Below, one piece after another: positions 1 through 45,417 of a stretch of 64,000 nucleotides of DNA. Source of the DNA: Macrostomum lignano (taxonomy: Eukaryota); the NCBI GenBank assembly GCA_002269645.1, contig NIVC01000551.1, positions 477,287 to 541,286 of the forward strand, read 5' to 3'. The first letter of the stretch is position 1, and each line of letters begins with the position of its first letter. The translations under genes and the position numbers were made by a program. The notes under the pieces are model-generated. The model saw only the letters and a program-made list of their open reading frames with translations. It searched no databases and was not told where the DNA came from.

Positions 1-59
1 CTTTGATTGAGGCTACTGAATGGTTCATTTCGCACGAGGCATTTCATGACATTCCGCAG

Positions 60-911
60 GTGTTCAATGTGGCTTCTAATGTCTGCTCGCAGCTGCTGGT
101 GCTGAACTCCACCAACGCCGGCTGCCAGTTGCCCTCCTGCACAACGGGAGGCTTTCTGGACCTGCTGTCCAGGACGTGCGCCAGCACCCAGTACGTCAAC
201 AACAGCGGTAACGGCTCAGACGCGTACGCCGTCAGAGTGCGGCAGCTGCAGCCGGGCACCGAGTACTCGGTGAGGGTGACGCCGGTCAGCCAGACTTTAG
301 CTGGGGACTCAGCTGAGCTCAACTTTGTCACTGCTGGTGGAGACGGTGGCGGTGGCGCAGCGACCATCGTGGTGGCAGTCGCGGTGCCGCTGGTGGTCAT
401 TCTGGCTATCGTTGCGGCTTCGCTGATCTTCCTTCGGATTCGTCGGCAAAACAGGTGCGACTCAAATTTTGTGCTCAAAGCAGCTGAGCTGGGAAGGTGC
501 AGAGAAACTGAGAGTCCCGGTTTCGATTCCGTTAATTTGTGTGCACGTACCTGATGGTGAGGTGGTCAGGACCGATGTGCACTCTGTGTGAGCCTGTGTT
601 ATGCTGCAAAGTTTCATTGGCTGAATGATGTCCCCAAACTACAAACTGAGCACCTGGTCTGAGAGCCATTGGTTAGTGCTGGTGGCTCGAACTCAAACCG
701 AATTTTACAGAGTGCTCAACTTAATTTAACAGCAGGTGCTGTCATTTCATTGAACCCTTCCAGATCTCCACAGAAAGCTGCCAAGCCAGCTTCTGACAGC
801 CCTGCAGGCAGCGGAGTCAGCGGTGCACCAAACGATTACGCCACTGTGGTTGGAGGCTCCGCTCAGTCAGCTGAATATGTGGAGATCCCTGCTGTGAATG
901 GCCGGCGTTAG
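60..911 (+). CDS. 3' end of FN3-repeat single-pass receptor, paralog 1 (exons 60-454 and 764-911; 5' part lies outside the window)
   Basis: Exon 60-454 (cag|GTG...AG|gtgcg) encodes an FN3 C-terminal half (VRQLQPGTEYSVRVTPVS), a Gly linker, a hydrophobic TM helix and RIRRQNR. A phase-2 junction to 764 (ttccag|A) gives the tail SPQK...NDYATVV...AEYVEIPAVNGRR*. Structure and phases match gene 2. Confidence 0.85.
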
Positions 912-2643: not shown

Positions 2644-5600
2644 ATGCACTGCGTGTCTGCTGGAGCCCGACGTCTCTTCCGCTGCAGTTGCTGCTGCTGG
2701 CTGCTTCTGGTTGCTGCTGCAGCTGCTCTGCTGCTGTGCGATGAGGCGGCTGCTCAAGGCACGTCGTGTGGAAAACTGGTGCCGGGTCAGGTGGATCCTG
2801 TGACAGTGGCTGCTGTTCGCTCTTCCACAAATTCATCAATAACAGTTGATTGGCTGGCACCAGACCGTGGCATCACAGGGTACTTTTACATAGTAAACTG
2901 CCCCAGCTGTCCCAGTCGGCAGCAAAACACTACACATGAGACATTCACGTTTCGAGGTCTCACAGCGGCTATTGAGTACAACTTCTCCATTCAGGCAGGA
3001 CTTCACAACTGCAGCCTCAGCCCTGCGTTCCATCTTTCTGGAAAGACAGGTGAGAATGAAGCTGAAAATTCAGTACAGAATGCACCTCAGGTGCGACGCT
3101 GGCTGCCACACTTTGGCCATCTGAGTTTCTCCTGGATTTTTACGACTGTAAATATACGCTCGTGAGATCATAGCATTTCTCACTCTAACAAATCAATTTG
3201 ATTATTCTGGGTTTTGTCAGCATTCCAATTTTTATTTAATACTAATTTAATGCTGCCAAAAATACAGAACCAGATCGCGAAACTTCTCAACAGCAGTTAA
3301 GCAAAATTCCCAACACAATTGCAGCACTCAGCGGAATCGCAGGACCAGTGCACATCTCGGATGTGACGGAGACGAGCTTCAGAGCCCGGTGGGCGGCCTC
3401 TCCCGATGTTGGAGTCGAGTATGAAGTCAGCTGCGCTGGCAGAGTGCCAGACACAACCGCTGTGTGCACAGGCCAGCCATCCGGAGCCTCTGTCACAGTC
3501 ACTGTGAGACCCGTCAAAACTGGGTTTCCGACTGGGTTTTACATTTACGGCACAGCTTTGACCAGTGAGCTGCATTATCAAACTGAAAATATTTTGAATG
3601 TACTTCGATAAAGAGATTGTCAAATAGATCGAAGTACATTAATTGCTGATTCCAAACAATAACAAGGCGGATCAAACTAATTTATAAAAAGCCGATATCA
3701 AGATTCTGTCGCATTACTGTTTGTGCCATAAACTTTACTCGTAGTTGTGAATACTTATGCACTATATAACAGCTGCATGTATCTATTGAAATTGAAATCG
3801 CTGTTCTGGATATTGCTCGGATAAGCCATTCACACCAAAAAATAAAATAAAGACAGACTTGCTCAGTGAACAGGCAGACAGGTACGGTAATAGTCACGAG
3901 CTGTCCTGAAAATTTCCAATAAATTGCTGCTCAATAAATGTAAAATCTTGAAGCTGCTGCTGTGTAAGTCTGTAAGTGGCAGGATTAAGCGTACTCCTAA
4001 TACCTGTATGACTGCTTTTAGATGGAAAATTATTTATGAATAAATTAAGTTTAGCCGCCATCCGTAGGAACCAAAATCATCAGAGATGCTCATCAATTGC
4101 AGAGCTGTTCGGCATTGACGCCAGCTCAGCTCAGTACAGCTCCAATGAGACCGCCATCTCTGTGACTTGGCAGCCATCCAGCACTTCTGGCGTCTCGTAC
4201 CAGCTCACCTGCAAGCGAGTCGGCTCAGGTGAAGTCTCGACCGCGTCTTCATCCACTCCGTCAGCCACCTGCGGCTCCCTGCAGTCTGGACAGGCCTATG
4301 AGCTGCGGGTGGCTGTGCAGAAGTCGGGCGGCTTTGATGACGTCATCACGCGTCTGTCCAACCAGCTGACCAGTGAGTTCCTTCAGATGCTTTGCTTTGG
4401 AAATCTTTGCAAGCAAAGTAGCGGTGGCAACAGTGGGTCGCGTTTGCATTGCCATCAAATTACATCACAAAGCACAATAAAAGTCACATGGATAGATTTA
4501 GCAATAGTGATTGAGTTCTTTGGCTTCTGCAATGAGGATTTTACATCTATATTTCTATACGTGCGTATGCACGATTATTTGTATTGAATTTGAGGTTTTT
4601 GAGCTGCTAAACTTCCTCTGATATTTTGCTTTGCTGAGGCTGTAGAGAAACATTACTTAATAAGTTGTTATATAGCTTTGCTTGGTGTTATTATTTATTG
4701 AAATGAATGACTGGGTATACAAGTTAAATACGCATCAGGTAATTCACGCTTTAAACATTGCCTATACTTCCATCGGAAACAGGATTATCGGCCAATATGC
4801 TATAATTAGAGACAGTTCTGTAATGACCGCTGTTTTACTGGTAAACACAGAATAACAACAGTAGGTCTCTCAGTAAAACAGTTTTCGAAACTACTTTCAG
4901 TAGTTAAACTCTTTAGTAAACTGAACTTAAGAAGAAAAAACTATTGCATCACCTCTCAAGCTTTTTAGGTACATTCGTCTATTTCACAGCGTTTAAACAA
5001 ACTCGTGCATTGAAATTTGCAGAGCTGTTCGGCATTGACGCCAGCTCAGCTCAGTACAGCTCCAATGAGACCGCCATCTCTGTGACTTGGCAGCCATCCA
5101 GCACTTCTGGCGTCTCGTACCAGCTCACCTGCAAGCGAGTCGGCTCAGGTGAAGTCTCGACTGCGTCTTCAGCCACTCCGTCTGCCACCTGCGGCTCCCT
5201 GCAGTCTGGACAGGAATATGAGCTGCGGGTGGCTGTGCAGAAGGCGAGTTTTGATGACGTCATCACGCGTCTGTCTGACCAGCTGACCAGTGAGTGCTCA
5301 GCTGCTTCGGTGCCAGTATTTTACTTTATTTTAGTTGGTTTACGTCACACAGATTGGCCATCTACTTGTTTGACAAAAAGACCGTGCTCACCGGAACTGT
5401 TCGAAAGGATCGTGGAATCCCGAAAGAATTGCAAGAAAAATTAGTGGCTGCTCCGGGTCAGGGCTTCGATCGTGAGGTGCGATCAGACCTTTAACATTTG
5501 AGAGTGAAAATATATAACGGAAATGCATACTGGACTTCTTTAAATCAATCATGACCTGCACAGCAGGCCATACTGGGCACTTGCTTTAGTGATTGGGAGA

Positions 5601-8600
5601 TGGTTTTTGATGCCATAGACATTTTTCAATCTCTGGGTTTTTGGACCGTTTCGGTATGGCCTGCGGTGCAGGACTTTGGTTTCCAAATGTTTAAGGTCCA
5701 GACCAGCGTTGTGGCAAACGCTGGAATGTCATCATATATAGAAATGTGTTACTGAGTTTCCTTCTTCATATTTTATACAGTCCATCAGCATTAACCTTTA
5801 CAACAGCCCCCTTTCTAACCTTCATAATCGCGCCATTCGTTTTAATCCCCAAGTACATCCATTCAGAACATACAGTGTTGCTTCTTGCTGCTCCAACTAA
5901 CGGGGACACTTGGATAATTTGAAAATATGTTCACTCATGAGCGTCTGACATTCTGACCAAAGGCCAATTAGGTAGATTAATTTTGTTCAGTGACTTAAAA
6001 AAGAAAACGAATCCAAACTAAAATGTTCGTTCCAATGTTGTTCAATCGGGTCAGAGCTGTAACGCGACAGAACTTCCATTGCTGCTGACACAATTCTTGT
6101 CGGGTGGCGTGGCTTGTGGTGCGTTATTTAGACTTCCTACTGCTGCCTGATGCATGGTTTTATCTACTCTAATATCGCAGTCTTGAGAAGTGTGAAGCTT
6201 TGGTTTGCAGTTCTCCGTGTTGAATTTTGCAAGAGCAGAGTTCAAGTATCTTAGCTCAATGAGCAATTTATGCCATCCATCCAGGTTGCTTGTACTCCAG
6301 AGGAAGTAATACACAGTTCTGAATTCGCTTGCATTAGACCAAGGGTGAGAAGCTGTTCACGAAGAGCTCATAATCTACTCCGTACTCTTGAGAGCACCCC
6401 TTCACTACTAATCTCACCTTGAATCTGTCAACTGGGCCATCTGACTTGTACTTCACTCGAAACACCCATCTGCAGCCAATAGTTTGTCGTCTTTTTGGTA
6501 GCCGAACTAACTTTCTGACACTTCCTTTAGAGTCTTGGGTTCTTCAATCTGTGTTGCATTAGGTGCTAAGTTTCTGTCGACGGGTTTCTTCTCCCGAGTC
6601 GACATCCGGACTTCCTGGTTGTCACTGGTACGAGCGTACGAGAGCCGCATTTCGATTCAGTCACCATTGGTTCTGTATCCGTCTGTAACCGAGGTGTGTC
6701 CTGATGATCTGATTCTTGCTTCTTAAAACACGACTCTTGAAACGTTACCTCTTGGCTGAGAGCGTTTTGTAGTATAGACATCGATTAGTTTCCGAGTATC
6801 CTATAAATCCTACTTCTCGGACTTTTAAGTCAAATTTGTGACGGTTTTTGACTAGAAAGTGAGCGTAGGCCACGCATCCGAATACTCGCAAATGTTGCAC
6901 GTTTGGCTTATTGCCAGCCAGAAGGTACGGAAGGCATAGGTACAGAAGGCTTTGAACTCACCTGATACAGACTCTCCACCAGTATCAGTTCGAATAACTT
7001 AAATGAATTTAATTGATTGCTTTGTGGCTTGTGCTTGTGAATTCTTAAATCTGTCCAAACAAATCTAACTTGCCTTTTTTGCAGAAAGTTAGACTCAGCA
7101 GTAGTACGAGCTGTCATCAATGAATGTTTGCATTGGGCCGCACAAATCGCTGTAAATCTGGGCCAACAGTTTGCTGGACCTTGAACTCTCCCCCTTCTTA
7201 ATTGGTGTTCTGTCCATTTTGCCTTCCACGCATGCCTTACAAAATGAAATGCCGTCAGTCTGCACGCTGATATTTTCCAGTGCGATTACTTTGACTATAT
7301 TTTCTTGAATTAGTGAGTTTGTTGTTGTTGTTGTTGTTAAACGGGGGTGGGAAGCTGGGCTTACTCGCGGATCAGCCCTAAAGGGGGCTCTGCCGCTAGT
7401 GGGGCACTTTCCAAGGGCACGGGGAATTCCGTGTACCCGAGTTACCCTCCTCGGAAGTCCCAGGACCAATTTAGTTGGGCCCTGACTTAGGCCAGGGGAG
7501 GCGAGGGACTTCAAACCTACGGTACAAGACAATTAGTGATTTTAGAGCTTGCTCTCCACTAGCAGTTGCTGCTCCATTAGCTACGGTGAATTATTCGATT
7601 TTTAAAGTATTCCAATTTTCATGACGTCTCCAGCAACATTTCCACTTTTGTCTACAATTTTTATACAGTTTTGAAAACTGCACATTAAAGCCTTTTCTTG
7701 TAGCTGCTGATACTGAGAACAGGTTTTGATTTAACTAGCTAACGTTATATCACACCACACGACATGAAATAATTTATCGATGCAAAATGCTCACTGATTC
7801 TGAGAAACACTTATCTTTCTACTTGCTAAAAAACAAACATTTGCAGTCATTAGATATTTATCAGGCAGGCATGTCCGGTGTCAAATGATAAGACAAAAAT
7901 TAGGATTCCCACCCGCCTCGCAACCGCAGAGCTCTTCCCGATCGACGCCAGCTCAGTAAGTTTCACCATCAGAGAGACTTCCATCTCCCTGACTTGGGCG
8001 GCGTCCATCACTGAAGGAGTTCTGTACCGGGTGACTTGCAAGCAAGTCAGCACAGGGAATTCAATATCTACGCCTCCATCAGAGTATCTGAGTGTCACCT
8101 TCGCCCGTCTGCAGTCAGGAGAGGCCTACAACCTGAGTGTGGCTGTGACTAAGCAGGGCGGCTTCGATGAAGTTGTCACCTGGCTGCCAATCCAGCTGAC
8201 CAGTGAGTTGGAGCTCAGCAAATGATTGCAGCTGCTCTGATGAGGCACAGCTCGCTTCTATTGGGTCCGTTTCATTGCAGAGCTGTTCGGCATTGACCCC
8301 AGCTCAGCTCAGTACAGCTCCAATGAGACCTGTACGTTGTACGTTGAAGCTTAAAGTGCAACTTGATGAGAAATCTTTTATCAGTTCGCTCATCCTATGC
8401 TTTACTTCAGCTCACCTTATTTCCCAATTTGTTTTGAATTTCTTGGAACCCGGTAGTTAAAGTTTGAAACCCGGATTACGAGCCGCGAGCGGTCGCATTA
8501 ATTTGGGCATTTTGGGTGACAAGGGGCACGCCTACATTTTTATGACAAGCACCACTTGAAGTTGCCATTGCAGTGGGACTTAACAGTCGTTTTGCATAGA

Positions 8601-11600
8601 TGATTCAGTATTTGAAGGCTGAAACATTTTAAGATCCTGGTGCACGATCGCTTAAGTCTGGTTTGCGCTTGCGTGCAAAGTGGCTTCATTCTTTTTTTTA
8701 TTTGAACTCAAGAAAACTGCTTTAAGGAGATTGTCGAAGACAGAAAATCTGATGCAAAAAAACTTTAGTTTCATATACAAATTTTTTTAGGTCTAAGATT
8801 GTGGTAAAACCCTATTTTGATTCAATGCTTTCTGTGAGATTCCTGATATGCAACGCCAACTTCTAGTTCTAGTGGTCCTTGGCCCTAAGGATGAGAAAGT
8901 CAGGGCGGCTCTGCACCCTGTGTGAGCGTGTGTCTGGGTACATGTCTCGTCGCCTCCTCGCTCTTGCTTGCTTGCGTCTTCTTGCGACTAAAGGAACTCG
9001 CACCTCACCCATTCCCTCGCACCCGTCAACCGCCGCAGAGCTGTACTCAGTGAACCCCAGCTCGGTCAGCTACTCAGCCAACGAGTCGGCCATCAGCGTG
9101 ACCTGGGACGCCTCAGCCACCGGTGCTGGAGTTCACCACCAGCTGCGCTGCCTCAGTGGCTCAAACGGCTCAGTCGTGATCAGAAATGTCACCTCGCCTG
9201 AGCAGCGGCTCAGCGCCACCTGCGACTCCCTGCAGTCGGGCTCGGAGTTCAGCCTGCAGATTTTCGTGCTGAAGGTGGGCGGCTTCAAGCCCGCATTGGC
9301 GAAGGTGGGACAGCTGCTCACCTGTGAGTCTCGGGCGATAATTGAAATAATCGATGTTTTATAGATGCCTGGTATCGTTTAAAGTGCATTAATTAGTGGG
9401 ATCGCACTTTTTCAGATTTTCGGCACGAAACTTTAGAATATGTAGTCTAGTACAGCCGCCCCCGGGGTAAGAGGCTTAATTAGGCTTTAAACAGATTATA
9501 ATTTCACCGTGTAAAACAAAAATATTCATCTGGCATCTCTGCATTCTAAGCACGTATTTCATGGCATTATTTTCTTCAGATGGTTTTCTCAACGAATTTC
9601 GTACTGTCACTCAGCTCACAGTGTTACTCAGCTCACAGTGTCACTCAGCTCACAGTGTCACTCAGCTCACAGTGTCACTCAGCTCACAGTGTCACTCAGC
9701 TCACAGTGTCACTCAGCTCACAGTGTCACTCAGCTCACAGTGTCACTCAGCTCACAGTGTCACTCAGCTCACAGTGTCACTCAGCTCACAGTGTCACTCA
9801 GCTCACAGTGTCACTCAGCTCACAGTGTCACTCAGCTCACAGTGTCACTCAGCTCACAGTGTCACTCAGCTCACAGTGTCACTCAGCTCACAGTGTCACT
9901 CAGCTCACAGTGTCACTCAGCTCACAGTGTCACTCAGCTCACAGTGTCACTCAGCTCACAGTGTCACTCAGCTCACAGTGTCACTCAGCTCACAGTGTCA
10001 CTCAGCTCACAGTGTCACTCAGCTCACAGTGTCACTCAGCTCACAGTGTCACTCAGCTCACAGTGTCACTCAGCTCACAGTGTCACTCAGCTCACAGTGT
10101 CACTCAGCTCACAGTGTCACTCAGCTCACAGTGTCACTCAGCTCACAGTGTCACTCAGCTCACAGTGTCACTCAGCTCACAGTGTCACTCAGCTCACAGT
10201 GTCACTCAGCTCACAGTGTCACTCAGCTCACAGTGTCACTCAGCTCACAGTGTCACTCAGCTCACAGTGTCACTCAGCTCACAGTGTCACTCAGCTCACA
10301 GTGTCACTCAGCTCACAGTGTCACTCAGCTCACAGTGTCACTCAGCTCACAGTGTCACTCAGCTCACAGTGTCACTCAGCTCACAGTGTCACTCAGCTCA
10401 CAGTGTCACTCAGCTCACAGTGTCACTCAGCTCACAGTGTCACTCAGCTCACAGTGTCACTCAGCTCACAGTGTCACTCAGCTCACAGTGTCACTCAGCT
10501 CACAGTGTCACTCAGCTCACAGTGTCACTCAGCTCACAGTGTCACTCAGCTCACAGTGTCACTCAGCTCACAGTGTCACTCAGCTCACAGTGTCACTCAG
10601 CTCACAGTGTCACTCAGCTCACAGTGTCACTCAGCTCACAGTGTCACTCAGCTCACAGTGTCACTCAGCTCACAGTGTCACTCAGCTCACAGTGTCACTC
10701 AGCTCACAGTGTCACTCAGCTCACAGTGTCACTCAGCTCACAGTGTCACTCCGCTCAATCTCAATCCCCATCTCCCCGCCCTCCCCAGGGCCGCAGCTCA
10801 GCGCCGACCCCGCCAGCCGACCCTCAGCCGCTGCCGCGGAGTCGCAGCCGAGCGAGTCGCAGCCCGCTGAGGCGGTGCTGCTGCTCAACTGGACGTCCAG
10901 TGCTGCCGAGGGCGCCGACCTGCTGCAGTTCCGCGTGAGCAGCGCCTCGAAGCCCGACTTGCTGAGGGAGGCTGCGTTCATCTCGATGAGGCTGCTGCTG
11001 AGCCTGGCGGAGGCGGAGCTGCTCTCGCTGAAGCTGACAGTGGCGGTGACTGCCGTGGCCAACAAATCCGGGCTGAGGCAGGAGAGCTCGGAGATCGTCA
11101 TTGCTGAGCAGCTGCAGATGCGTGAGTTCAGCTCAGAGTCTTTGTTGTGAGTGAGTGTTGGTTCTGAGTGAGTGTTGGTTCTGAGTGAGTCTTGGTTCTG
11201 AGTGAGTGTTGGTTCTGAGTGAGTGTTGGTTCTGAGTGAGTGTTGGTTCTGAGTGATTGTTGGTTCTGAGTGAGTGTTGGTTGTGTGAGAGTATTGGTTT
11301 CGAGTGAGTCTTGGTTCTGAGTGAGTCTTGGTTCTGAGTGATTGTTGGTTCTGAGTGAGTTTTGGTTGTGTGAGAGTATTGGCTTCGAGTGAGTCTTGGT
11401 TCTGAGTGAGTATTGGTTTCGAGTGAGTCTTGGTTCTGAGTGAGTCTTGGTTCTGAGTGAGTGTTGGTTCTGAGTGAGTGTTGGTTCTGAGTGAGTCTTT
11501 GTTCTGAGTGAGTGTTGGTTCTGAGTGAGTGTTGGTTCTGAGTGAGTGTTGGTTCTGAGTGAATGTTGGTTCTGAGTGAGTCTTGGTTCTGAGTGAGTCT

Positions 11601-14600
11601 TGGTTCTGAGTGAATCTTGGTTCTGAGTGAGTCTTTGTTCTGAGTGAGTCTTGGTTCTGAGTGAGTGTTGGTTCTGAGTGAGTCTTGGTTCTGAGTGAGT
11701 CTTGGTTCTGAGTGAGTCTTTGTTCTGAGTGAGTCTTGGTTCTGAGCCCCGTTTCCCCGCTGCCGTCCCGCAGCGCCCGGCCGCCCTTCGGTGTCGCTGC
11801 TGCCGGACAGGCGCGCCGTCGAGGTGTCGCTGACTGCCAGCTCTGGCTCCGAGCTGCTGACAGCGGCCGCCCACGCAGACAGCGGGAGCTTCGCTGCTGC
11901 TACCAACAGCTGCCGCCCGGACTCCGGCAGGTGCACCGTGGCTCTGCAGCCGCTGAGGCCGTTCACCAACTACTCGGTGGAGGCGGTCGCCGAGCTATCG
12001 GGCCTGGCCTCGCTGCCCCAGAGGTCGGAGGTTCAAACGCTGGAGGACGCGCCGTCGCAGCCGCAGTCGGTGAGGCTGGACGATGCGTCATCGCAGTTGC
12101 TTTGCATCTGGCGGGCTCCCAGCGAGCCGAACGGCGTCATCCGCAACTACTCGGTGGCCTGGGGCTCGCTGAGCTTCCCGGACGGCGCTGAGATTCGCGT
12201 CGGAGCCGAGGTGACAGCGGCCGACACGACCTTCCTGCCGCTCGAGCCGCCGCCGCTGCCGGCCCACGTCGGCTTCTGCCGCGTCAGCGCCTGCACGGGC
12301 GGCGGCTGCAGCCGCGGCAGCGACAGGGCGGAGCGGCGGCTGCCCGACGGCGAGGCGCCCGCGGTGTCCGGCGGCCTACAGCCGCTGGCGGTCCCTGGCG
12401 GTCCCGTCCGCCTCAGCTGGAAGCCGCTCAGCCCCGAGCTCGGCCGGGGCGTCGTGTTCGAGTTCGAGCTGCGACTGGACGGTCCGGGCGGCTGCGCGGC
12501 GGCCCGGCGGCTGAACTGCTCCGACTGCGGCCGCCACCGCCTCCAGCTGCAGTCGGAGGAGGCCCGGCAGCGGCTCGAGGCCCTCACGGCCGACTGCTCA
12601 GCGCCGGTGCTCGTGCGGACCTTTGAGTTCGGCGACGCCTCGCTGTCCGCGGAGGTCGCCGTTAGCTCCGAGGGCGCCTCGCCGAGCTCGCTGCTGCCCT
12701 GGACCGAGTACGGCGCCTCGCTGTGGCCGGTGAACCTTGCGGGGCCCGGCGCCGCCGCCTCCGCCTCCTTCCGCAGCCCGGAGACTCGCAGCGGCGCCGT
12801 CGGCGGCCTGCGGGCGACGCCCTCGGAGGCGGAGGCGCTGGTGGAGTTCGAGGAGCCGCGGCTGCCAAACGGCCTGCTGCAGGCGTTCGCTGTGCAGGTG
12901 AGGCCGCCTGCGACTGGGAGCCCCATTGCGAGGCATGAGAGGGACTGAAGGGACACCGGAGGCACTGAAGGGACAGCGGAGGCACTGAAGGGGCAGCGGA
13001 GGCACTGAAGGGACAGCGGAGGCACTGAAGGGACAGCGGAGGGACTGAAGGGGCAGCGGAGGGACTGAAGGGACAGCGGAGGAACCCATGGACAGGAAGT
13101 GACTGATGACTCAATGCAGTGACCTAAGTGGCATTGTCAAGCACATTATTCTGATGCTAAAAGCTACCCAGTGGCAAATATTAGCGAATATTTTCATAGA
13201 CCCTGTGCTCACTCAGAGTTTCAGTCCTGACTCGCCTTCTGTTGAGATTCTCACACAGTCGGCACGATGCTCTGGGTTGGCCAGATTTTGTTTGTGTGGA
13301 GTTGGCGAATCGATAAGAAAGCAGCAGTGCGCATGCAGAGCTATCTAAACTGCATGCCAGTATCCGGGTTATTTTTATTCCTTATGCAGCAACCGCTATA
13401 ATTGAGTGTACATATTTAGTGCTATGCTTATGGTTGATAACAGGGTAGATTATGATAGCTTTGGAGGACTTGACTGACTGTGCATTGCCTCTCTCGCTGG
13501 GCCTCTCATTATCTATTTTTTCCAAAAGCCTGCAGGTGGAAAGTTAATCTGATATAAGTACATGCTGATATATATATTTTCTATACGAACTACTTATAGC
13601 CATATCTGATTGATTAATATTTTTTATTCGTGATGGGGAGAGTGAAGGGGAGAGTGATAGGGAAAGTGAAGGGGAGAGTGATGGGGAGAGTGAAGGGGAG
13701 AGTGAAGGGGAGAGGGATGGGGAGAGTGATGGGGAGAGTGATAGGGAGGGTGATGGGGAGAGTGATGAATAGAGTGATGGGGAGAGTGATGGGGAGAGTG
13801 AAGGGGAGAGTGAAGGGGAGAGTGATGGGGAGAGTGATAGGGAGGGTGATGGGGAGAGTGATGAATAGAGTGATGGGGAGAGTGGTTGGTAGAGTGATGG
13901 GGAGTGTGATGGGGAGATTGGAGAGTGATGAGCGTGATAGAGAAAGTGATGGGAAGAGTGATGAAGAGAGTGATGGAGAGAGTGATGAGGTGGTAAGTGA
14001 TGAGGAGACTGATAGGGAGAGTGATAGAGAGTGTGATGGCGAGAGTGATGGCGAGAGTGATGGCGAGAGTGATGGCGAGAGTGATGGCGAGAGTGATGGG
14101 GGAGAGTGTGAGAGTGATGGAGATACAGAGGAGGGAACTGTTAGAGCTGAGCCGTTTAGTCAAACGCAGTCATGAAAACTCAAACTGCAGCTAAAAGCTC
14201 CATAGAGGTGTTCCAGCAGCCCCAAGTTGCATCCAGCTTGAAACTGCAGCTGCCAATGTCAGTCACTGGACAGCCAAATCTCCCCCAACTCCCCAGGTGC
14301 TGAACTCATCCTCAGGCTGCTCCCAGATGCTGGTGCTGAACTCAAGCTCAGCTCCCGGCTGCCAGCTGCTCAACTGCAGCACCAATGAGCTGCTGAATGA
14401 ACTCGCTGCTGAGTGCGGCTCCGCTCCCACGGTTGCTATGCCGACTGGTGACCCTAGCAACGGCTTCACCCGTCACACAGTGAGGCTGGAACACCTGCAG
14501 CCAGGCTCAGAGTACTCAGTGAAGGTGATTGCCGTGAGCCAGACTCTCACAGGAACTCCAGCTCAGGTCAAATTCACCACAACTGGAGGCGGAGGCGGCG

Positions 14601-15858
14601 GCTCGATGACCATCGTGGTGGCGGTTGCGGTGTCGGTGCTGGTTGCCATGGCGATTGCGGCTGGCCTGTTGGGCTTGTTGTGGTACCGCAGGCGCAGCAG
14701 GTTCGGCTTGTCGTGACTTTTGATTGGATTCCACTGACTGGAAATCCCCTGACCGGGATTCTCCCTGCTGGGATTTCCCTTACTGGGATTCCCCTGACCG
14801 GAATTTCCCTGCTGGGATTTCTACTGTCTGGGATTCCCCTGTCTGGGATTCCCCTGACATGGATTCCCCTGACATGGGTTCCCCTGATAGGGATTTCTCT
14901 GACTGGGGCCTTTCATAACTGGGATTCCCTGAGGAGGCCAGCAAGCAAGCCCTTCCACCTGATACCACTGTCGTTAGTAGTAAGTTTGAGTGTGCAAAAT
15001 TTGATGAAACAATTTTATTTTGTAGTCGATAAAAAATAAAACACCAAGGAATCCCATTGAGGAAGGCCATGTTTAACCTGTTGTGGAAACCAATCCCTGA
15101 TTTTTGCTAACTGTGGCTTTCATTTAACCAGTTTAATTGCGAAAAGTTCCATTTTTCAAAAACTTTTCCAGACGTACCGACCAGAATCAACAGTCGACAT
15201 CCATGGAGCGAATTTCGAAAGGATTGTCCAACCAAGGACTTCAAAAGGAACGTCGGTCAGGAGACTCGTTGAAAAATGATTCAAACCCTGTGTAAGTTTT
15301 GACAGTTTTGTGTTAGCACCTAATGGACCATTGACCAGTTCTGTATAATCTTTATATTGTAGGTTTCCTGGAAAATATCATAAAGTTTAGAACCCTCCGC
15401 ACATGTATGTTATCAGCATCACCCACACCATCACCCACCCCATCAACCACCCCATCACCCACCCTATCTCACCAAATCACCCACCCCATCACTCACCCCA
15501 TCACCCAACTCATCACCCATCCCATCACCCACCCAATCACCCACCCATCACTCACCCCATTACCCACCCCATCACCCACCCCATCACTCACCCCATCACT
15601 CACCCCATCACCCACCTCATCACTCACCCCATCTCACCAAATCACCCACCCAATCACCCACCCCATCACCCAATCACCCACCCCATCACCCAATCATCAT
15701 CCATCACTCCATCATACTGCAGGTCTCAGCAGTCATCAGGTGACACCAGCAGCACCTCAGCGAGAGCCAGTGTCCATGAATATGCCATTGTGGTGACACC
15801 AGCTGTTCCCACAAGCTCAGAATATGTGGAAGTTGTCGGCACAAAGGATGGTGCTTAA
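2644..15858 (+). CDS. FN3-repeat type I membrane receptor, paralog 2 (about 1239 aa). Exons 2644-3049, 3343-3564, 4103-4372, 5023-5289, 7930-8202, 9039-9323, 10789-11121, 11774-12897, 14297-14700, 15723-15858
   Basis: All junctions are GT-AG with consistent phases (1,1,1,1,1,1,1,0,2), and exon lengths sum to 3720 nt with no stop. It has an N-terminal signal peptide (WLLLVAAAAALLLC), FN3 signatures (WRAPSEPNGVIRNYSV, LLPWTEYGASLWPVNLAGPG, LQPGSEYSVKVIAV), a TM helix (IVVAVAVSVLVAMAIAAGLLGLLW) and a short Tyr-motif tail. Confidence 0.8.
4103..4372 (+). CDS. FN3-like cassette exon copy 1 (phase 1-1)
   Basis: ttgcag|AGCTGTTCGGC...CAGCTGACCA|gtgag; encodes LFGIDASSAQYSSNETAISVTW...LQSGQAYELRVAV. 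Confidence 0.85.
5023..5289 (+). CDS. FN3-like cassette exon copy 2 (phase 1-1), about 96% identical to copy 1
   Basis: Same splice boundaries as copy 1; about 10 substitutions and one 3-nt indel by manual alignment. Confidence 0.85.
5880..7315 (-). mobile_element. Degenerate Ty1/copia LTR retrotransposon pol remnant, intronic and antisense to the host gene
   Basis: The minus strand gives CKACVEGKMDRTP...IYSDLCGPM (GAG-pre-integrase/integrase start, 7098-7315), LVRLPKRRQTIGCRWVFRVKYKSDGPVDRFKVRLVVKGCSQEYGVDYE (copia RT, about 6340-6530) and YLNSALAKFNTENCKP...HQAAVGSLN (RT C-terminal part). Confidence 0.85.
7318..7535 (-). mobile_element. Probable 3' end of a non-LTR retroelement or SINE with an (AAC)n tail, abutting the copia remnant
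   Basis: A (GTT)7-like run at 7318-7338 is followed by a GC-rich segment that is compositionally unlike the copia and intron flanks. Confidence 0.3.
7930..8202 (+). CDS. FN3-like cassette exon copy 3 (phase 1-1)
   Basis: ccgcag|AGCTCTTCCCG...CAGCTGACCA|gtgag; encodes LFPIDASSVSFTIRETSISLTW...LQSGEAYNLSVAVTKQGGFDEV. Confidence 0.85.
8281..8331 (+). pseudogene. Truncated fifth cassette-exon copy or possible 51-nt micro-exon
   Basis: ttgcag|AGCTGTTCGGCATTGACCCC...GAGACCT|gtacgt; the first 50 nt match copies 1 and 2 with one mismatch. Confidence 0.6.
9039..9323 (+). CDS. FN3-like cassette exon copy 4 (phase 1-1)
   Basis: ccgcag|AGCTGTACTCA...CTCACCT|gtgag; encodes LYSVNPSSVSYSANESAISVTW...LQSGSEFSLQIFVLKVGGF. 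Confidence 0.85.
9602..10750. repeat. 17-bp intronic minisatellite (TGTCACTCAGCTCACAG), about 67 near-perfect copies
   Basis: Period read directly; ends just upstream of the acceptor at 10788. Confidence 0.97.
11146..11746. repeat. 17-bp intronic minisatellite (TGAGTGAGTG/CTTGGTTC), about 35 copies
   Basis: Period read directly; fills almost all of the intron 11122-11773. Confidence 0.95.
12939..13082. repeat. 20-bp intronic repeat (GGCACTGAAGGGACAGCGGA), about 7 copies
   Basis: Period read directly. Confidence 0.9.
13630..14120. repeat. 12-bp G-rich intronic repeat (ATGGGGAGAGTG), degenerating toward the 3' end
   Basis: Period read directly. Confidence 0.9.
14722..14930. repeat. About 15-bp intronic repeat (GGGATTCCCCTGNCT), about 14 copies
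   Basis: Read directly; starts about 20 nt after the TM-exon donor. Confidence 0.85.
15415..15712. repeat. 12-bp C-rich intronic repeat (CATCACYCACCC)
   Basis: Period read directly; reverse complement of the 13630-14120 family. Confidence 0.9.
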
Positions 15859-16536
15859 TACTTAGCCACGTGACTGGTTGGCTTTTGCAAATTTGAACTT
15901 AAAAAGCGTCTATTGCTACTGATAAAGTCCGATAGTGTACACTAGAAGTAGTTTGACGTGCTTTTTACTCACAAATTCTTTAAGAGATTAAAGAAAATCA
16001 AACTCAATTTTTTTCGATTTATTTGTTTAAATGATTGTCCTATGTTTCCATGAAAGAACCTAAGCATAACTGAGCCTTTTAATCTCATCACTAATAACCA
16101 AAACCATTTTTATGTAAAATAATTGATAACTGTTGTTTGTTCAAGTCTAACGTTAATAATAAAATTTCATTAGACTGTGCACTCAATTAAAGATTTGTTT
16201 TAAGTAGGAAATTCGCCGGAAGAAACCAAAGAAAAGCAAATATTTTTTCAAAATTCCTGTAAAGGAGTCTAGGATCATATTTAGAAAGTTGCAATGCTGA
16301 AAATGTAGCTTCAGGCAGTGACAGTTCCGCCTTGGTCTAGCAGGTATTGATGATGGTGTATCAAACATGAAACTCTAAGAAAAAAGATTGATTCTGGGGA
16401 ATATTTTCCTGTTAACAGATTTCCTACGTTACGTTTTGTACTATAAGTTGCTGTGGTTACGAGCTGAGCCATGCATTCTCTTCCTAAAATAATGTTTTTG
16501 TGTTGTGTTTTCTTGTGAATTTTGTGACGACGGAGC

Positions 16537-17045: not shown

Positions 17046-18040
17046 GATGTAAAAGAAGATAACACATCCATATACTAAAAATGGTCTGTCGGTATCTTAG
17101 GCTTCTATAAATAGATAAAATATCTGCTCTAAGAAGGTTTCATTTTTTTCAAGAGATGAGTTAAGCCTCGGTGTTAGCAAAATGTCAATAATTTGTTACC
17201 CGAAATAAGAAAAATGAGCATTTATTAACTATAGAGAACTGCTTGAACTTGTTCGCCAATGAAAGGTGCAATTAATAATTGCTGCGTGCACCAGGCAGAA
17301 ATGTCTACACATAAATAATTTATAATTATATAGCTTCGTGGAACTTCAGTCCAAAGAGAGACTCATTCGAGGTCGCGCGTGATGTTCGCGCGTGTTTTCA
17401 TCATTGTTTTGCACCAGGGCTTATTATAGCCGCACAGGTAAAAAGGTATTGGAATTTGCCTATACATGGACAGTCACCACATGCACTGGGGAAGCGTCTC
17501 CCTGCACGCGTTCGTGTCCGAGTGTCCGCGTTTTCGCCTGTGTCCTACATGTAAGTGCAGCCACGTGTGTAGAGCGCGGCAAAGGCAAAAAAGACAAAAA
17601 CAAAACGCTGCTGAAGGCTCTCCTCAACTGATCGAATCCCGGTGCAGATCCCACAGCTACTAAAGACACGTCTGAATCCCAGCAAAGGAATTGGGAATCC
17701 GATGCAATGCGCTCAGATGAAGTCCAGATGCAGGGGGAGGCAGACAGAGAGTGAATCTGCATGCCAATCTGCTTTAATGGAGAATTAATTCCCTGTTCGA
17801 GTCCAGCTTATAGCTAAGACATTGCCGTCATGCGGGTAGCAACTTGAGCAGACGAGGATGAGTAATCTTCAGTTAAGTCTTCTTTAAAGCTCGACAAAGT
17901 CGCCTCCCAAAACAGTTTTTCTGTTGGCTTGATTGAATGGCCTGATTTGCGTCAGCTGTAGGCGAGGGTGCCAAGCAAATCTCTGTAAATGCATTTGAAC
18001 AGGGAGCCTTCTGATGGTCATTAGCGAGCTTAGCGAGTTT

Positions 18041-18968
18041 CATTGTTTACAATCTCTGTTGCATTGTTTACAATCTTCGTTTCCTTGTTTACAATCTCTG
18101 TTCCATTGTTTACAATCTTCATTTCCTTGTTTACAATCTCTGTTTCATTGTTTACAATCTCTGTTGCATTGTTTACAATCTCTGTTGCATTGTTTACAAT
18201 CTCTGTTCCATTGTTTACAATCTTCATTTCCTTGTTTACAATCTCTGTTCCATTGTTTACAATCTTCATTTCATTGTTTAAAATCCATGTTCCATTGTTT
18301 ACAATCTCTGTTCCATTGTTTACAATCTTCATTTCATTGTTTAAAATCTCTGTTCCATTGTTTACAATCTTCATTTCATTATTGTTTAAAATCTCTGTTC
18401 CATTGTTTACAATCTTCATTTCATTGTTTAAAATCTCTGTTCCATTGTTTACAATCTTCATTTCCTTGTTTACAATCTCTGTTCCATTGTTTACAATCTT
18501 CATTTCATTGTTTAAAATCTCTGTTCCATTGTTTACAATCTCTGTTCCATTGTTTACAATCTTCATTTTCTTGTTTACAATCTCTGTTCCATTGTTTACA
18601 ATCTTCATTTCATTGTTTACAATCTATGTTCCATTGTTTACAATCTCTGTTCTATTGTTTACAATCTCTGTTCCATTGTTTACAATCTTCATTTCATTGT
18701 TTAAAATCTCTGTTCCATTGTTTACAATCTTCATTTCCTTGTTTACAATCTCTGTTCCATTGTTTACAATCTTCATTTCATTGTTTAAAATCTCTGTTCC
18801 ATTGTTTACAATCTCTGTTCCATTGTTTACAATCTTCATTTTCTTGTTTACAATCTCTGTTCCATTGTTTACAATCTTCATTTCATTGTTTACAATCTAT
18901 GTTCCATTGTTTACAATCTCTGTTCTATTGTTTACAATCTCTGTTCCATTGTTTACAACCTCTGTTTC
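18041..18968. repeat. 21-bp minisatellite (CATTGTTTACAATCTCTGTTC / ...CTTCATTT variants), about 44 copies
   Basis: Period read directly. Each unit holds the inverted motif ATTGT-TT-ACAAT. The period is a multiple of 3, which explains the long spurious ORFs. Confidence 0.95.
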
Positions 18969-19196
18969 ACTTTATACAATCACGGATATATTTTTTACGG
19001 ATCCTTGTTTATCCATAAATTCGCTTTATAAAAATCATAACTGTAATTTTCACAATTCAGAACCAGCATTTAGTAAGCAAAATTAACCAAAAGATTAACC
19101 ATGCTCAGACCTCACCTGCTAATTAAATTATGGGGCTTTGAAAAACTGGCACACTTTGAAAAAAATAAATTTTTCAAAAGTTTTTAAAGCAATTTT

Positions 19197-19657: not shown

Positions 19658-20713
19658 ATGCTGCGTTCAAATTATCGCTACAGCCGCGACCATCACCATC
19701 AACAGTCTGGTCAGCATCACAATCACCATCATCACCATCAACAAAGTCATCACCAGCTGCCGTCTTCATCTCCGTCAACCGGCGGGGCCAACTGCAACGC
19801 CTGCGGCAGCGGCAGCTCCCCGGTGTCTGTCTTCTTCGACGAGATGGAGTGGCGCTGGGGCGAGACGCCGCCCGGAGCCGGCGGAGTCGCAGCGGCAGCG
19901 GCTGTCGGGCACGCGGGCAGGCAGGGCAGCCTGAAGCAGCAGCTGGGCCTCTCGGCGCTTGGCCGGCGGGCTCGCGAAGGCTTCCGCCGCTGCCAGACGT
20001 CTCGGGACTCCTCGGCGGAGATGAGCCGCTCATTCGAGGCTTCGGTTGTCCAGCAGCTGGGCGTCGGCGGCAGCGCCAAGCTCGTCAAGCTTCTCGGCGA
20101 GGAGGTGAAAGCCGACGAGAAGGTGCTGTTCGACCATTTCTACGACCGCGGACGTCGCAACGCCTTCGCCAACATCTTCTGCGGCCTGTCCAGTCGGGGA
20201 CTTCGTCGACTGTTCGCCGTCTACGGCATCGACGAGGTGCAGATGAAGCCGCCGGCGCCGGCGTCGCCAACGCAGCTGTCGCCGCCGCTGGCCTCGGCGA
20301 TGTCGCTGGTGACGGACGCGCACCATCGGGAGCGTCGACGCAACCGGCCGGAGTTGGCGACGTCTCGCGGTGGCAGCGTTGAAAGTCGCGACAGCTCCGG
20401 CGGTCGCAGCGGCGTCGGCGGGGGCGGCAGCGGCGGCAGCTACCGCCCGAGAGCGGGCAGCGCCAACCAGCAGCTGCGGCAGCGGCGCCGGCGGCAGCAG
20501 CAGCCAAGCCAGCACCAGCAGCTGGCATCGGCCGCCTTCACGCTGCTTGGCTGCGGCAAATCTTCGTCTGCCGACGACGATCGAGACGACGCAGCAGCCG
20601 CCGATGCCGGCGGCGACTTTCTCGGCGGCAAAGACGAAGGCAGAGCGGCTGCAGGTCGCCGCCGCGACACCGTGGAAGACCTGGGCGTGGTGGCTGCAAT
20701 CAATAACCAGTAA
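19658..20713 (+). CDS. Hypothetical protein (351-aa ORF; His/Gln-rich N-terminus, central non-repetitive segment, Ala/Gly/Gln-rich C-terminus)
   Basis: Long GC-rich ORF with the same codon style as the other exons here. It includes a plausible folded stretch (AKLVKLLGEEVKADEKVLFDHFYDRGRRNAFANIFCGLSSRGLRRLFAVYGIDEV). No family recognised. Confidence 0.6.
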   Translation: MLRSNYRYSRDHHHQQSGQHHNHHHHHQQSHHQLPSSSPSTGGANCNACGSGSSPVSVFFDEMEWRWGETPPGAGGVAAAAAVGHAGRQGSLKQQLGLSALGRRAREGFRRCQTSRDSSAEMSRSFEASVVQQLGVGGSAKLVKLLGEEVKADEKVLFDHFYDRGRRNAFANIFCGLSSRGLRRLFAVYGIDEVQMKPPAPASPTQLSPPLASAMSLVTDAHHRERRRNRPELATSRGGSVESRDSSGGRSGVGGGGSGGSYRPRAGSANQQLRQRRRRQQQPSQHQQLASAAFTLLGCGKSSSADDDRDDAAAADAGGDFLGGKDEGRAAAGRRRDTVEDLGVVAAINNQ

Positions 20714-43826: not shown

Positions 43827-45417
43827 CGTGCATGTGTACAAATCTTTCTGGGTCCCGTTTCAGAGGAGGTAAAAATGATTTAAAATGTTAATATAAATCA
43901 ATATTATATACTCGTAGCTTTATTAACTTGGACTGCATTGACGAGAGGAACGCAATAATGCTGATGCATGTATGCATACAGTGTATGTTGTCTTCATGCA
44001 GGTTCAGGGAGATCTCAGGGCGAATGGCGTTATGGTCTGGCAGTCTGCGCGGGACCGAGGGAGGTTGAACTATCACGGGAATTAAAAGTGAGCCGGAGTT
44101 CGCGTGATGTGGAAAACGGGAAATACATTTATGATGTATTTTATGTGCATGTACATGTATTGAGAGTCGCCTAGCTAGCACAAAAGTAGCCTATTACAGC
44201 TTGTCGATCGTGTACTTCTGTGATTGACCATAAAAAAAGGGTTTTGATTAATTGGTTCGACTAATTAATTCCAAGGGTTGCAATCTGAAGAATGTGTCAC
44301 ATGATGTGAGAAAATTAGGCGATAGGAATGAGATAAAAGCGGACACCACCGCCTACTGTGAATGATTTCAAGCAGTATCGCGCGTTGTTGTGATACATGT
44401 ACATGTAGATGAAAAGCAGTGGGGCCGGCCGGGTGGGCAGTCATCTGATTTGGTCATTGATGGAGAATCGAGGAATCTGCATGGATTCCCTTGCAGGGTG
44501 GAGACAAAGTACATGTACATACGGCTTGGACGAAATCATTAGAGCTATGGCCTACCAACCCTATTGGTCTGGCGGCTTTAGCTAGACTACTATATAGGAA
44601 TTGAATTTTCGGAATGTACATTTTGAGAGACCAGAGAAAGCCACACGTACGTAACTACGTATAGTTGTGTCCTGCAAGTCCTGCAAGAGTACGTAGGTAC
44701 ATGTACATAAGTGTACATAGACTGAATGAAAGGAATATGGTGTACATCAGGACAAATAGCAGAAGTTTAGGAATAGTAACTTAAAACTTCAGTCTAATAG
44801 GTTTAGCAGCTGGCATACAACTCACGTAAACCGGAGTAAAATTTCTTGTTCAACACAAAATCGTGACAAAATTCCTCAGAGTAGAATAATAAGCTTCAGC
44901 AGGTAATTCAAAGAGGCCCTGCTCCTAGGCCCAAAATGCTCCTGTAGCTTAGCCATACACACAGCTTGTCATTATGAGTTGCTGCACAAGCTTCAACAAG
45001 AAAAGCTACAGGGAGAACTGAACCTCTCTCAGTCTCCGCTCCATGCTAGCTCGTAACATACGTGTCGCTAGTCCTCGGAAAAAACTGCTGGGGACACGCT
45101 CCGCTGACTTTTGCTGAGTTAAAAACTGTTGAATTGTTCAGATGCGTTGCCTTTGTTAACCATGAGCGCTTAGCTTTGCTATACCTTCATGTATAGCCTG
45201 CCAGGATCATCGCCCTCCCTCCATCTCTCCACAGTCAGCACCTGCTTCCCCCCTACTGTTTGCTGCTAGCTATGGCAACAAAACAAATAGAAGCAAAGGC
45301 AGGCATCCGATGCGCATAAGGCCTGGACCCCCGAGGCGGGAGACGGGCCAGAAGCAGGAGAGAAAAGTTTTGTCACTCAGCAACACAGCAATCGGCAACT
45401 TCAGCAAGCAAAGCCTG

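What the first reader, a model, noticed from the sequence alone, without database searches (positions are those of the whole stretch)
4103..9323. Array of homologous, symmetric phase-1 cassette exons: Dscam-like combinatorial splicing potential
Seen: four homologous exons (267-285 nt, all multiples of 3) each start cag|AG CT and end CAG CTG (ACC A / CTC ACC T)|gtgag. They are about 96% identical (copies 1 and 2) or much more diverged (copies 3 and 4). Any subset can be skipped in frame, as can exons 3343-3564 and 10789-11121. Established: tandemly duplicated exons underlie mutually exclusive splicing in arthropod Dscam1. Inference: ectodomain length or specificity could be varied by splicing.
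Basis: partly seen in the sequence, partly recalled or inferred. Interest (0 to 1): 0.7.

Follow-up and report, generated by a model that had tools for sequence, protein, structure and literature searches.

The report
Repeated FN3 exons in flatworm receptor
Four look-alike exons, each coding one fibronectin type III domain, sit in a row in a receptor gene of the flatworm Macrostomum lignano; this is ordinary domain expansion that may be skipped as a block, not a Dscam-style pick-one-exon system.

Summary
Exons at 4103-4372, 5023-5289, 7930-8202 and 9039-9323 are homologous, are multiples of 3, are phase 1-1 and have cag|AG acceptors and |gtgagt donors. Each encodes one whole FN3 domain. A fifth copy survives as a 50-nt remnant at 8281-8330.

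The window comes from Macrostomum lignano. The gene is a signal peptide, FN3 ectodomain, transmembrane segment and short tail. It is a paralogue of an R3-type receptor tyrosine phosphatase but has no phosphatase domain.

The Dscam analogy fails:
- There is no docking/selector complementarity above shuffled controls.
- Nothing penalises including two copies.
- RNA-based gene models of three paralogous loci carry a B-type and an A-type exon in series.

The weaker idea, that splicing varies ectodomain length, gets indirect support. At the closest sister locus (L002, array A-A-B-A-D) the RNA-seq-based GenBank model joins E0 directly to E5 and skips all five intact array exons. The array exons are nonetheless conserved like the expressed flanking exons (94% against 80% for introns).

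The closest known analogues are the optional FN3 repeats of tenascin-C and FN4-7 of LAR-type phosphatases. No RNA evidence exists for the window gene itself. Interest is low to moderate.

The parts
2644..3049 (+). Exon 1: start codon, signal peptide and first FN3-like domain; donor CAG|gtgaga, ends in phase 1
   Evidence: 91.7% protein identity to the RNA-based model P0159.
3325..3564 (+). Exon E0, a short FN3-like module, phase 1-1. The acceptor homologous to the one used in RNA-based paralogue models is 3325.
4103..4372 (+). C1: A-type FN3 exon, 270 nt, phase 1-1
   Evidence: Pfam fn3 31.5 bits against a cut-off of 25. Positional orthologue is L002 11862-12131, 95.9% identical.
5023..5289 (+). 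C2: A-type FN3 exon, 267 nt, phase 1-1. It shares a 3-nt deletion with its positional orthologue in L002.
6334..7300 (-). Decayed copia-type retroelement pol fragments inside the 2640-nt intron C2-C3
   Evidence: One search lists the ORFs. One search gives SH3_retrovirus E 3e-12 at 6745-6900 and RVT_2 at E 0.004, below the curated cut-off, at 6334-6465.
7930..8202 (+). C3: B-type FN3 exon, 273 nt, phase 1-1
   Evidence: (fn3 30.5 bits).
8203..8280 (+). 78-nt intron that joins B-type to A-type exons in paralogues. It is 78/78 identical to L002.
   Evidence: No unusual fold (z 0.27).
8281..8330 (+). Remnant of a fifth exon (A-type): first 50 nt with an intact ttgcag acceptor. The rest was lost in a deletion of about 310 nt relative to L002. 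Using it would introduce a stop codon unless C4 is skipped.
9039..9323 (+). C4: D-type FN3 exon, 285 nt, phase 1-1, the most diverged copy
   Evidence: 96.8% identical to L002 18728-19012.
9605..10757 (+). 17-nt minisatellite, about 68 copies, filling most of intron C4-E5
   Evidence: Present at the same place in L002.
10789..11121 (+). Exon E5, phase 1-1. Its acceptor has a 90% pyrimidine tract. At the sister locus it is joined directly to E0 in the RNA-based model.
11774..12897 (+). Large exon encoding further FN3 domains
14297..14700 (+). Exon with the membrane-proximal FN3 and the transmembrane segment
   Evidence: Homology to L002 ends near 14932.
15723..15858 (+). Inferred last exon: about 45-residue cytoplasmic tail with YAIV and YVEV, then the stop codon. 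No phosphatase domain.
   Evidence: The tail resembles that of the upstream paralogue P0004. No PTP exons anywhere in the window.

Best explanation
The region is a block of one-domain-per-exon fibronectin type III (FN3) exons in the ectodomain of a Macrostomum lignano single-pass membrane protein.

**The gene.** It is a phosphatase-less, tandemly duplicated paralogue of an R3-type receptor tyrosine phosphatase.

**Origin of the block.** It arose by tandem exon duplication and unequal crossing-over of A-type and B-type units. It has since lost one A copy by deletion. Its A copies are kept alike by gene conversion confined to the exons. Phase 1-1 symmetry is the normal state of FN3 module exons.

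**Splicing (inferred).** When used, the exons are spliced in series to lengthen the ectodomain. The block as a whole is optional. The E0 donor can pair with the much stronger E5 acceptor to give a short-ectodomain form. This resembles the optional FN3 repeats of tenascin-C or FN4-7 of LAR-type phosphatases. There is no one-of-N selection.

**Shown:** anatomy, domain identity, organism, gene family, conservation, lack of docking/selector pairing, and serial inclusion or whole-block skipping in RNA-based models of paralogues.

**Inferred:** that the window gene itself behaves in the same way.
For: - **Exon anatomy** and a clean 1239-codon reading frame.
- **FN3 matches** above Pfam's cut-off.
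- **Organism and family:** all close relatives are Macrostomum lignano proteins.
- **Sister locus L002** has the same layout (exon 1, E0, A, A, B, A, D, E5...) with all five array exons intact.
- **Whole-block skipping:** the L002 GenBank model P0159 reads ...GTALT-R-PLLIADPAS..., that is E0 joined to E5.
- **The annotation is RNA-based:** built from RNA-seq with StringTie/TACO plus a de novo transcriptome (PMC5730564).
- **Serial inclusion:** three RNA-based models (P0003, P0154, P0155) carry E0-B-A in series; the exons of one of them, P0003, were mapped on its locus L001.
- **Conservation, window vs L002:** array exons are 94.0% identical with no gaps in 1095 nt. Flanking introns are 79.9% identical with 16 gap events in 1105 nt (Fisher P 2e-23). 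E0 and E5 are 93.7% and 95.2%.
- **Acceptor strength:** pyrimidine tracts are 0.50-0.70 for array exons and 0.90 for E5.
- **Gene conversion among A copies:** they are 92-96% alike regardless of position or locus. Introns between positions share nothing. The four-gamete test fails, and C1/C2 show 0 differences in the first 139 nt against 13 afterwards.
- **Copy number differs among paralogues**.
Against: - There is no transcript evidence for the window gene itself.
- The skip-all model comes from a paralogue about 90% identical. Multi-mapping reads or transcripts from another copy (minId 0.8 in the pipeline) could have created or placed that junction.
- TACO was run with isoform-frac 0.75, so minor isoforms were discarded. 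No array-including isoform is on record for L002, so inclusion there is unproven.
- dN/dS is about 0.8 for both array and flanking ectodomain exons. Coding constraint is therefore weak, and exon conservation could partly reflect gene conversion rather than selection.
- The protein searches were visibly incomplete. P0159 was missed and P0007, so other annotated models may exist.
Confidence: 0.5

Rival explanations
1. Constitutive domain expansion. In this gene all four exons are always included. The array is simply a longer FN3 stalk with no regulated splicing.
For: - Intact frames and canonical splice sites in all four exons.
- Conservation equal to that of flanking expressed exons.
- Both intact array exons of the mapped paralogue locus L001 are included in its RNA-based model P0003; the near-identical models P0154 and P0155 of two further loci also read E0-B-A.
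- Phase 1-1 is generic for FN3 modules (established knowledge of module exons).
Against: The closest sister locus, with the same array, has an RNA-based model that skips the whole block. Array acceptors are weaker than the E5 acceptor.
Confidence: 0.25
2. Unused relic exons. The array is no longer recognised by the spliceosome in this gene or its sister. The only mRNA is the short E0-E5 form, and the exons look intact only because gene conversion from expressed paralogues keeps refreshing them.
For: - Only the skip-all product is on record for L002.
- dN/dS is about 0.8.
- There are clear gene-conversion signatures.
- One copy has already been destroyed by deletion in the window.
Against: - None of the nine full-length array exons in the two loci has a stop, a frameshift or a lost splice site. 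Flanking introns carry 14.5 gap events per kb.
- The same exon types are expressed in other paralogues.
- The annotation pipeline drops minor isoforms.
Confidence: 0.12
3. Free combinatorial cassette use. Each of the four exons is included or skipped independently, as with tenascin-C A1-D, giving up to 16 ectodomain forms per gene.
For: All exons are symmetric phase 1-1. Tenascin-C shows this behaviour with recently duplicated single-exon FN3 repeats (PMC4422809).
Against: No partial-skip model is on record. Only all-in (L001 type) or all-out (L002) patterns are seen in RNA-based models.
Confidence: 0.1
4. Dscam-like mutually exclusive choice. Exactly one of the homologous exons enters each mRNA, selected by competing RNA pairings.
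For: Tandem homologous exons of similar length at one position.
Against: - No inverted-repeat family shares one arm.
- Helix scans between candidate docking introns and selector regions equal shuffled controls: observed 8-12 nt, with 63-93% of shuffles at least as good.
- Duplex energies have z between -1.0 and +0.8 in 14 of 15 comparisons, and -2.7 in one.
- Lengths are multiples of 3 and each exon is a complete domain.
- B and A exons occur together in RNA-based models, and none is present in P0159.
Confidence: 0.02

Closest known systems
Tenascin-C alternatively spliced FN3 repeats (A1-D)
   Same: [quoted passage not shown]
- Neighbouring repeats are recent duplicates (A1-A4 about 80% alike).
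- They lie between constitutive FN3 repeats.
- Inclusion lengthens the protein in frame (PMC4422809).
   Different: Tenascin-C is a secreted matrix protein with documented isoforms. Here the protein is membrane-bound, and only all-in or all-out patterns are seen, and only in paralogues.
LAR-type receptor tyrosine phosphatases: optional FN4-7 block
   Same: A receptor-phosphatase ectodomain in which a contiguous block of FN3 domains is removed by splicing to give a short form (PMC13486334).
   Different: LAR-type proteins have Ig domains and two phosphatase domains. The sister gene here has an FN3-only ectodomain and one phosphatase domain. The window gene has none.
R3-subtype receptor tyrosine phosphatases (PTPRB, PTPRJ/DEP-1, PTPRH, PTPRO)
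   Same: - FN3-only ectodomain and a single transmembrane segment.
- Pfam Fn3_Dep-1 matches.
- The sister gene's catalytic domain matches PTPRB, PTPRJ, PTPRH and PTPRO best among single-domain structures.
   Different: The window gene has no catalytic domain. It ends in a tail of about 45 residues.
Arthropod Dscam1 variable exon clusters
   Same: A tandem array of homologous exons produced by duplication, in a cell-surface protein.
   Different: Dscam variants each replace the same part of one Ig domain. Exactly one is chosen, with docking/selector RNA pairing. None of these properties is found here.
Tandem exon duplications in repeat-domain genes such as obscurin
   Same: Runs of near-identical domain exons produced by tandem duplication within one gene (PMC9013439).
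   Different: Those are giant muscle proteins. No comparison of splicing behaviour was made here.

Membership tests
Dscam1-type mutually exclusive exon cluster | Tandem array of homologous exons of similar length at one position in the gene | tested here: met
   Four exons of 267-285 nt; tblastn E 1e-25 to 2e-18 between copies.
Dscam1-type mutually exclusive exon cluster | One and only one variant exon in each mRNA | tested here: not met
   Tested by proxy in paralogues only. RNA-based models P0003, P0154 and P0155 contain B and A in series. P0159 contains none of five. There is no RNA data for the window gene.
Dscam1-type mutually exclusive exon cluster | One intronic docking site complementary to a selector sequence next to each variant | tested here: not met
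   No inverted-repeat family shares an arm. The best common helix is 8-12 nt, equalled by 63-93% of shuffles. Duplex z-scores are mostly near zero. Power is low with only four exons.
Dscam1-type mutually exclusive exon cluster | Double inclusion is prevented or penalised (frameshift, steric block, incompatible splice sites) | tested here: not met
   All lengths are multiples of 3 and phase 1-1. Introns are 650-2640 nt. The 80-nt B-to-A intron is spliced in P0003.
Dscam1-type mutually exclusive exon cluster | Variants encode alternative versions of the same part of one domain, so domain number stays constant | tested here: not met
   Each exon covers a whole FN3 domain, profile positions about 3-76 of 84.
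Fibronectin type III domain (Pfam PF00041) | Profile match above the curated cut-off | tested here: met
   C1 31.5 bits and C3 30.5 bits against a cut-off of 25. C4 scores 20.6, below the cut-off, but is 42% identical to C1. The whole protein scores 148 bits over five stretches.
Optional FN3 cassette block (tenascin-C A1-D, LAR FN4-7 type) | Each optional FN3 domain on its own symmetric exon, flanked by constitutive exons in the same phase | tested here: met
Optional FN3 cassette block (tenascin-C A1-D, LAR FN4-7 type) | mRNAs both with and without the exons produced from the same gene | tested here: inconclusive
   Skip-all is the only model at L002. The include model is seen at L001-type loci. 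Nothing is available for the window gene. The pipeline drops minor isoforms.
R3-subtype receptor tyrosine phosphatase | FN3-only ectodomain with one transmembrane segment | tested here: met
   Pfam finds only FN3-type domains. A hydrophobic segment MTIVVAVAVSVLVAMAIAAGLLGLL is present.
R3-subtype receptor tyrosine phosphatase | Single intracellular tyrosine phosphatase catalytic domain | tested here: not met
   There is no Y_phosphatase match in the predicted protein. There is no tblastn match to P0159 residues 828-1238 anywhere in the 64 kb. Homology to L002 ends near 14932. The sister gene P0159 does have the domain.

The most novel reading that the evidence does not exclude
Across the six or more paralogous Macrostomum loci, A-, B- and D-type FN3 exons are independently regulated cassettes. 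Their number and sequence are reshuffled by unequal crossing-over and gene conversion. Together, gene copy variation and splicing would generate a diverse repertoire of receptor ectodomains, some with and some without a phosphatase. That would be a flatworm cell-surface diversity system working by cassette choice rather than by Dscam-style exclusion.
Probability: 0.07. Interest if true: 0.6.

Novelty: new member of a known kind. Interest (0 to 1): 0.3.

Why it matters
If the block is truly optional, this flatworm receptor family would make long and short ectodomains from one gene, as vertebrate tenascin-C and LAR-type phosphatases do. The phosphatase-less paralogues could then act as decoy or adhesion forms.

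The locus is also a clear small example of exon-restricted concerted evolution. Exons stay 92-96% alike while the introns between them share nothing.

None of this opens a long-standing question. The main practical value is as a caution: in-frame, homologous, phase 1-1 domain exons do not by themselves indicate Dscam-like splicing.

Tried and rejected
- **Whole-intron RNAduplex energies.** These were uninformative because long sequences give sprawling duplexes. I replaced them with a compact-helix scan against shuffles, which was negative.
- **Looping-out pairing between the first and last array introns.** Nothing appeared.
- **Spliced protein handed to the representative search.** The large single exon was used instead. 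That search recovered close Macrostomum relatives (P0005, P0007 and P0004 again), about 150 generic FN3-rich proteins, and one 960-residue relative of unknown origin (P0033).
- **Translating intron frames directly.** This failed on stop codons, so ORF peptides were used.
- **Literature search for the locus tags Mlig029524, Mlig011792 and Mlig022912.** No paper was found.
- **The three word-indexed protein searches.** They gave non-overlapping, clearly incomplete hit lists. No RNA-read-derived (Logan) proteins appeared, so direct junction evidence could not be obtained.
- **A regulatory hairpin in the perfectly conserved 78-nt intron.** Rejected: z = 0.27.
- **The UniProt name 'Protein-tyrosine-phosphatase'.** Rejected for the window gene, which has no catalytic domain.
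- **P0003's C-terminal part.** It looked lectin-like by eye but has no Pfam match, so it is not named.


Full report
**1. Observation**

Each follows cag| and starts AGCT. C1-C3 end CAGCTGACCA|gtgagt and C4 ends CAGCTGCTCACCT|gtgagt. Only the phase-1 frame is open.

C1 and C2 are 96.2-96.3% identical in nucleotides. C1/C3 are 67% and C4 against the others about 55%. Searching each peptide back against the window finds the other copies at E 1e-25 to 2e-18 and nothing comparable elsewhere, so this is homology and not chance.

The flanking exons 3343-3564 and 10789-11121 are also phase 1-1. Joining ten exons (2644-3049, E0, C1-C4, E5, 11774-12897, 14297-14700, 15723-15858) gives one clean 1239-codon frame.

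Two additions:
- A fifth A-type copy survives as a 50-nt remnant at 8281-8330, with an intact acceptor.
- RNA-supported paralogue models use an E0 acceptor 18 nt upstream, equivalent to window 3325.

**2. What the exons encode and whose gene it is**

Each exon is one complete fibronectin type III domain. Pfam fn3 scores are 31.5, 30.5 and 20.6 bits for C1, C3 and C4 against a cut-off of 25. There are weaker matches to the DEP-1/PTPRJ FN3 models.

The whole predicted protein has a signal peptide, FN3 domains only, one hydrophobic transmembrane segment and a tail of about 45 residues. All close relatives are proteins of the flatworm Macrostomum lignano.

The nearest relative is GenBank BOX15_Mlig029524g2 (P0159). 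It continues after the membrane into a single tyrosine phosphatase domain. Among single-domain structures that domain is most like PTPRB, PTPRJ, PTPRH and PTPRO, the R3 subtype.

The window gene lacks that part:
- No phosphatase exons are detectable anywhere in the 64 kb.
- Nucleotide homology to the sister locus stops near 14932.

A second phosphatase-less paralogue ends at window 3-554 and matches P0004. So this is a tandem pair of truncated family members.

**3. The sister locus and the key RNA-level evidence**

The P0159 locus (L002, GenBank contig NIVC01000551.1) is about 90% identical to the window and has the same layout:

| Element | L002 coordinates |
|---|---|
| Exon 1 | starts at 10001 |
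| E0 | 10550-10771 |
| A | 11862-12131 |
| A | 14965-15231 |
| B | 17291-17563 |
| A | 17642-17911 |
| D | 18728-19012 |
| E5 | 20213-20545 |

All five array exons are intact, with AG/GT sites and lengths that are multiples of 3.

Yet P0159 reads ...FIYGTALT-R-PLLIADPASRPS.... That is the E0 donor joined to the E5 acceptor, with the junction codon A+GG. The Mlig_3_7 GenBank annotation was built from RNA-seq (StringTie, TACO) and a mapped de novo transcriptome (PMC5730564), so this junction reflects transcript data. The look-up tool records only the longest product per gene. An array-including isoform would be longer, so none was annotated there.

By contrast, three RNA-based models from other paralogous loci (P0003, P0154, P0155) read exon 1-E0-B-A in series. 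Mapping P0003 onto its locus L001 confirms that E0, B and A are separate spliced exons, with the 80-nt B-to-A intron removed, and that further exons follow. L001 contains no other intact array exon.

Caveats:
- The pipeline accepted transcript mappings at 80% identity.
- TACO was run with isoform-frac 0.75.
- The genome holds several near-identical copies. The junction could therefore derive from another copy, and minor isoforms would be invisible.

**4. Test of the Dscam model**

- **Inverted repeats.** Across 3343-11121 no family shares one arm.
- **Compact-helix scan.** G-U pairs and one mismatch were allowed. Candidate docking introns (after E0 or after C4) were compared with the 200 nt next to each variant. 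Common helices were 8-12 nt, equalled or beaten by 63-93% of shuffles.
- **Whole-intron duplex energies.** z was between -1.0 and +0.8 in 14 of 15 comparisons and -2.7 in one. No common site emerged.
- **No penalty for double inclusion.** All exon lengths are multiples of 3 and the introns are long.
- **Whole domains.** Each exon is a complete domain, not an alternative half-domain.

With serial B-A inclusion and zero-of-five inclusion both seen in RNA-based models, the defining features of a mutually exclusive cluster are not met.

**5. Are the array exons alive?**

Comparing the window with L002:

| Sequence class | Identity | Gap events |
|---|---|---|
| Four array exons (1095 nt) | 94.0% | 0 |
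| Adjacent orthologous intron (1105 aligned nt) | 79.9% | 16 |
| E0 | 93.7% | 0 |
| E5 | 95.2% | 0 |

The exon-versus-intron difference gives Fisher P 2e-23. The array exons are therefore maintained like expressed exons.

However, dN/dS is about 0.8 for both array exons (0.79) and flanking ectodomain exons (0.84), and 1.2-1.4 for the B type. Protein-level constraint is weak throughout the ectodomain.

Part of the conservation is concerted evolution:
- A copies are 92-96% alike whatever their position or locus.
- Introns between positions share nothing, even with 7-nt words.
- C1 and C2 have no difference in the first 139 nt and 13 afterwards.
- Sites 193/194 and the 3-nt indel show all four combinations among C1, C2, L2A1 and L2A2. 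This four-gamete failure indicates gene conversion.
- Copy number and order differ among paralogues: A-A-B-a-D here, A-A-B-A-D in L002, B-A in L001, and longer A/B runs in predicted models P0001 and P0002.

**6. Mechanism proposed**

The E0 donor (CCA|gtgagc) can pair with any downstream acceptor. Array acceptors have pyrimidine tracts of 0.50-0.70 and the E5 acceptor 0.90. This is consistent with E5 winning by default and the array needing positive recognition.

I therefore favour an optional block: a long form with the FN3 exons in series and a short form with E0 joined to E5. This step is inferred from paralogues and from splice-site quality. It is not shown for this gene.

The remnant at 8281 keeps the acceptor and the 78-nt upstream intron, which is 78/78 identical to L002. 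Its use would be non-productive unless C4 were also skipped:
- Read-through runs into TAA.
- A 51-nt mini-exon ending at T|gtacgt creates TAG when joined to C4.

**7. Comparison with what is known**

- **Tenascin-C.** It has nine optional FN3 repeats, each on its own exon, with A1-A4 about 80% alike through duplication (PMC4422809).
- **LAR-type receptor phosphatases.** They drop FN4-7 as a block (PMC13486334).

These are the closest functional analogues. By family, the gene belongs with R3-type receptor phosphatases but fails the catalytic-domain criterion. In-frame skippability of 1-1 module exons is textbook. It carries no information about regulation.

**8. Verdict**

- **Observation:** confirmed.
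- **Dscam-like interpretation:** not supported.
- **Length variation by splicing:** plausible on indirect evidence.
- **Novelty:** a new member of a known kind.
- **Interest:** about 0.3.

Noticed in passing
window 8281-8330: A 50-nt remnant of a fifth (A-type) FN3 exon with an intact acceptor. A deletion of about 310 nt relative to L002 removed the rest. Using it gives a premature stop unless C4 is also skipped, so it may act as a poison exon.
   Followed up: yes
window 8203-8280 vs L002 17564-17641: The 78-nt B-to-A intron is 78/78 identical between the two loci. The adjoining B exon is only 90.5% identical and other introns about 80%. L001 differs at 4 substitutions and a 2-nt indel. There is no unusual predicted fold, so this may be a recent conversion tract or short-intron constraint.
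   Followed up: partly
window 9605-10757 and 11136-11746: Two 17-nt minisatellites (about 68 and 36 copies) fill the introns on either side of exon E5. Both are present at the same places in L002. Every unit of the second contains GTGAGT, the donor consensus used by this gene.
   Followed up: no
window 3-554 (+): The 3' end of an upstream tandem paralogue (membrane-proximal FN3 and transmembrane segment), identical to the C-terminal part of UniProt model P0004. That model also has a short tail and no phosphatase domain.
   Followed up: partly
window 14700-16000 vs L002 26443-31085: Homology to the phosphatase-bearing sister gene ends near 14932, in a 15-nt satellite just after the transmembrane exon. 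The window gene instead ends in a short tail exon (15723-15858) with YAIV and YVEV motifs.
   Followed up: partly
window 3325 vs 3343: Two in-frame AG acceptors lie 18 nt apart for exon E0. RNA-based paralogue models use the upstream one.
   Followed up: partly
window 6334-7300 (-): Decayed copia-type retroelement fragments (SH3_retrovirus, plus a weak RVT_2 match at E 0.004, below the curated cut-off) lie antisense in the 2640-nt intron between C2 and C3.
   Followed up: partly
window 25823-28232 (-): Retrotransposon pol fragments (integrase core rve, reverse transcriptase RVT_1) split over several ORFs.
   Followed up: no
window 55612-56304 (-): An ORF with a piggyBac-type DDE transposase domain (DDE_Tnp_1_7, E 8e-25).
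   Followed up: no
window 45310-47600 and 56666-58700 (+): Two tandem copies of a gene with a near-threshold PAN-domain match (20 bits against a cut-off of 21.4) and cysteine/tryptophan-rich repeats. Each copy carries the same 31-nt minisatellite.
   Followed up: no
window 60330-60992 (+) and 61632-62081 (-): Two ORFs with Kazal-type protease inhibitor domains on opposite strands.
   Followed up: no
window 30488-32227 (+): A 579-residue ORF containing about ten copies of a 45-nt coding repeat (KSDFPDPPLPAAKGG).
   Followed up: no
C3 vs L001 B and L002 B exons: The B-type exon shows dN/dS of 1.2-1.4 (20-21 non-synonymous against 5-6 synonymous changes). This is higher than the A and D types, but the counts are too small for a test.
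   Followed up: partly
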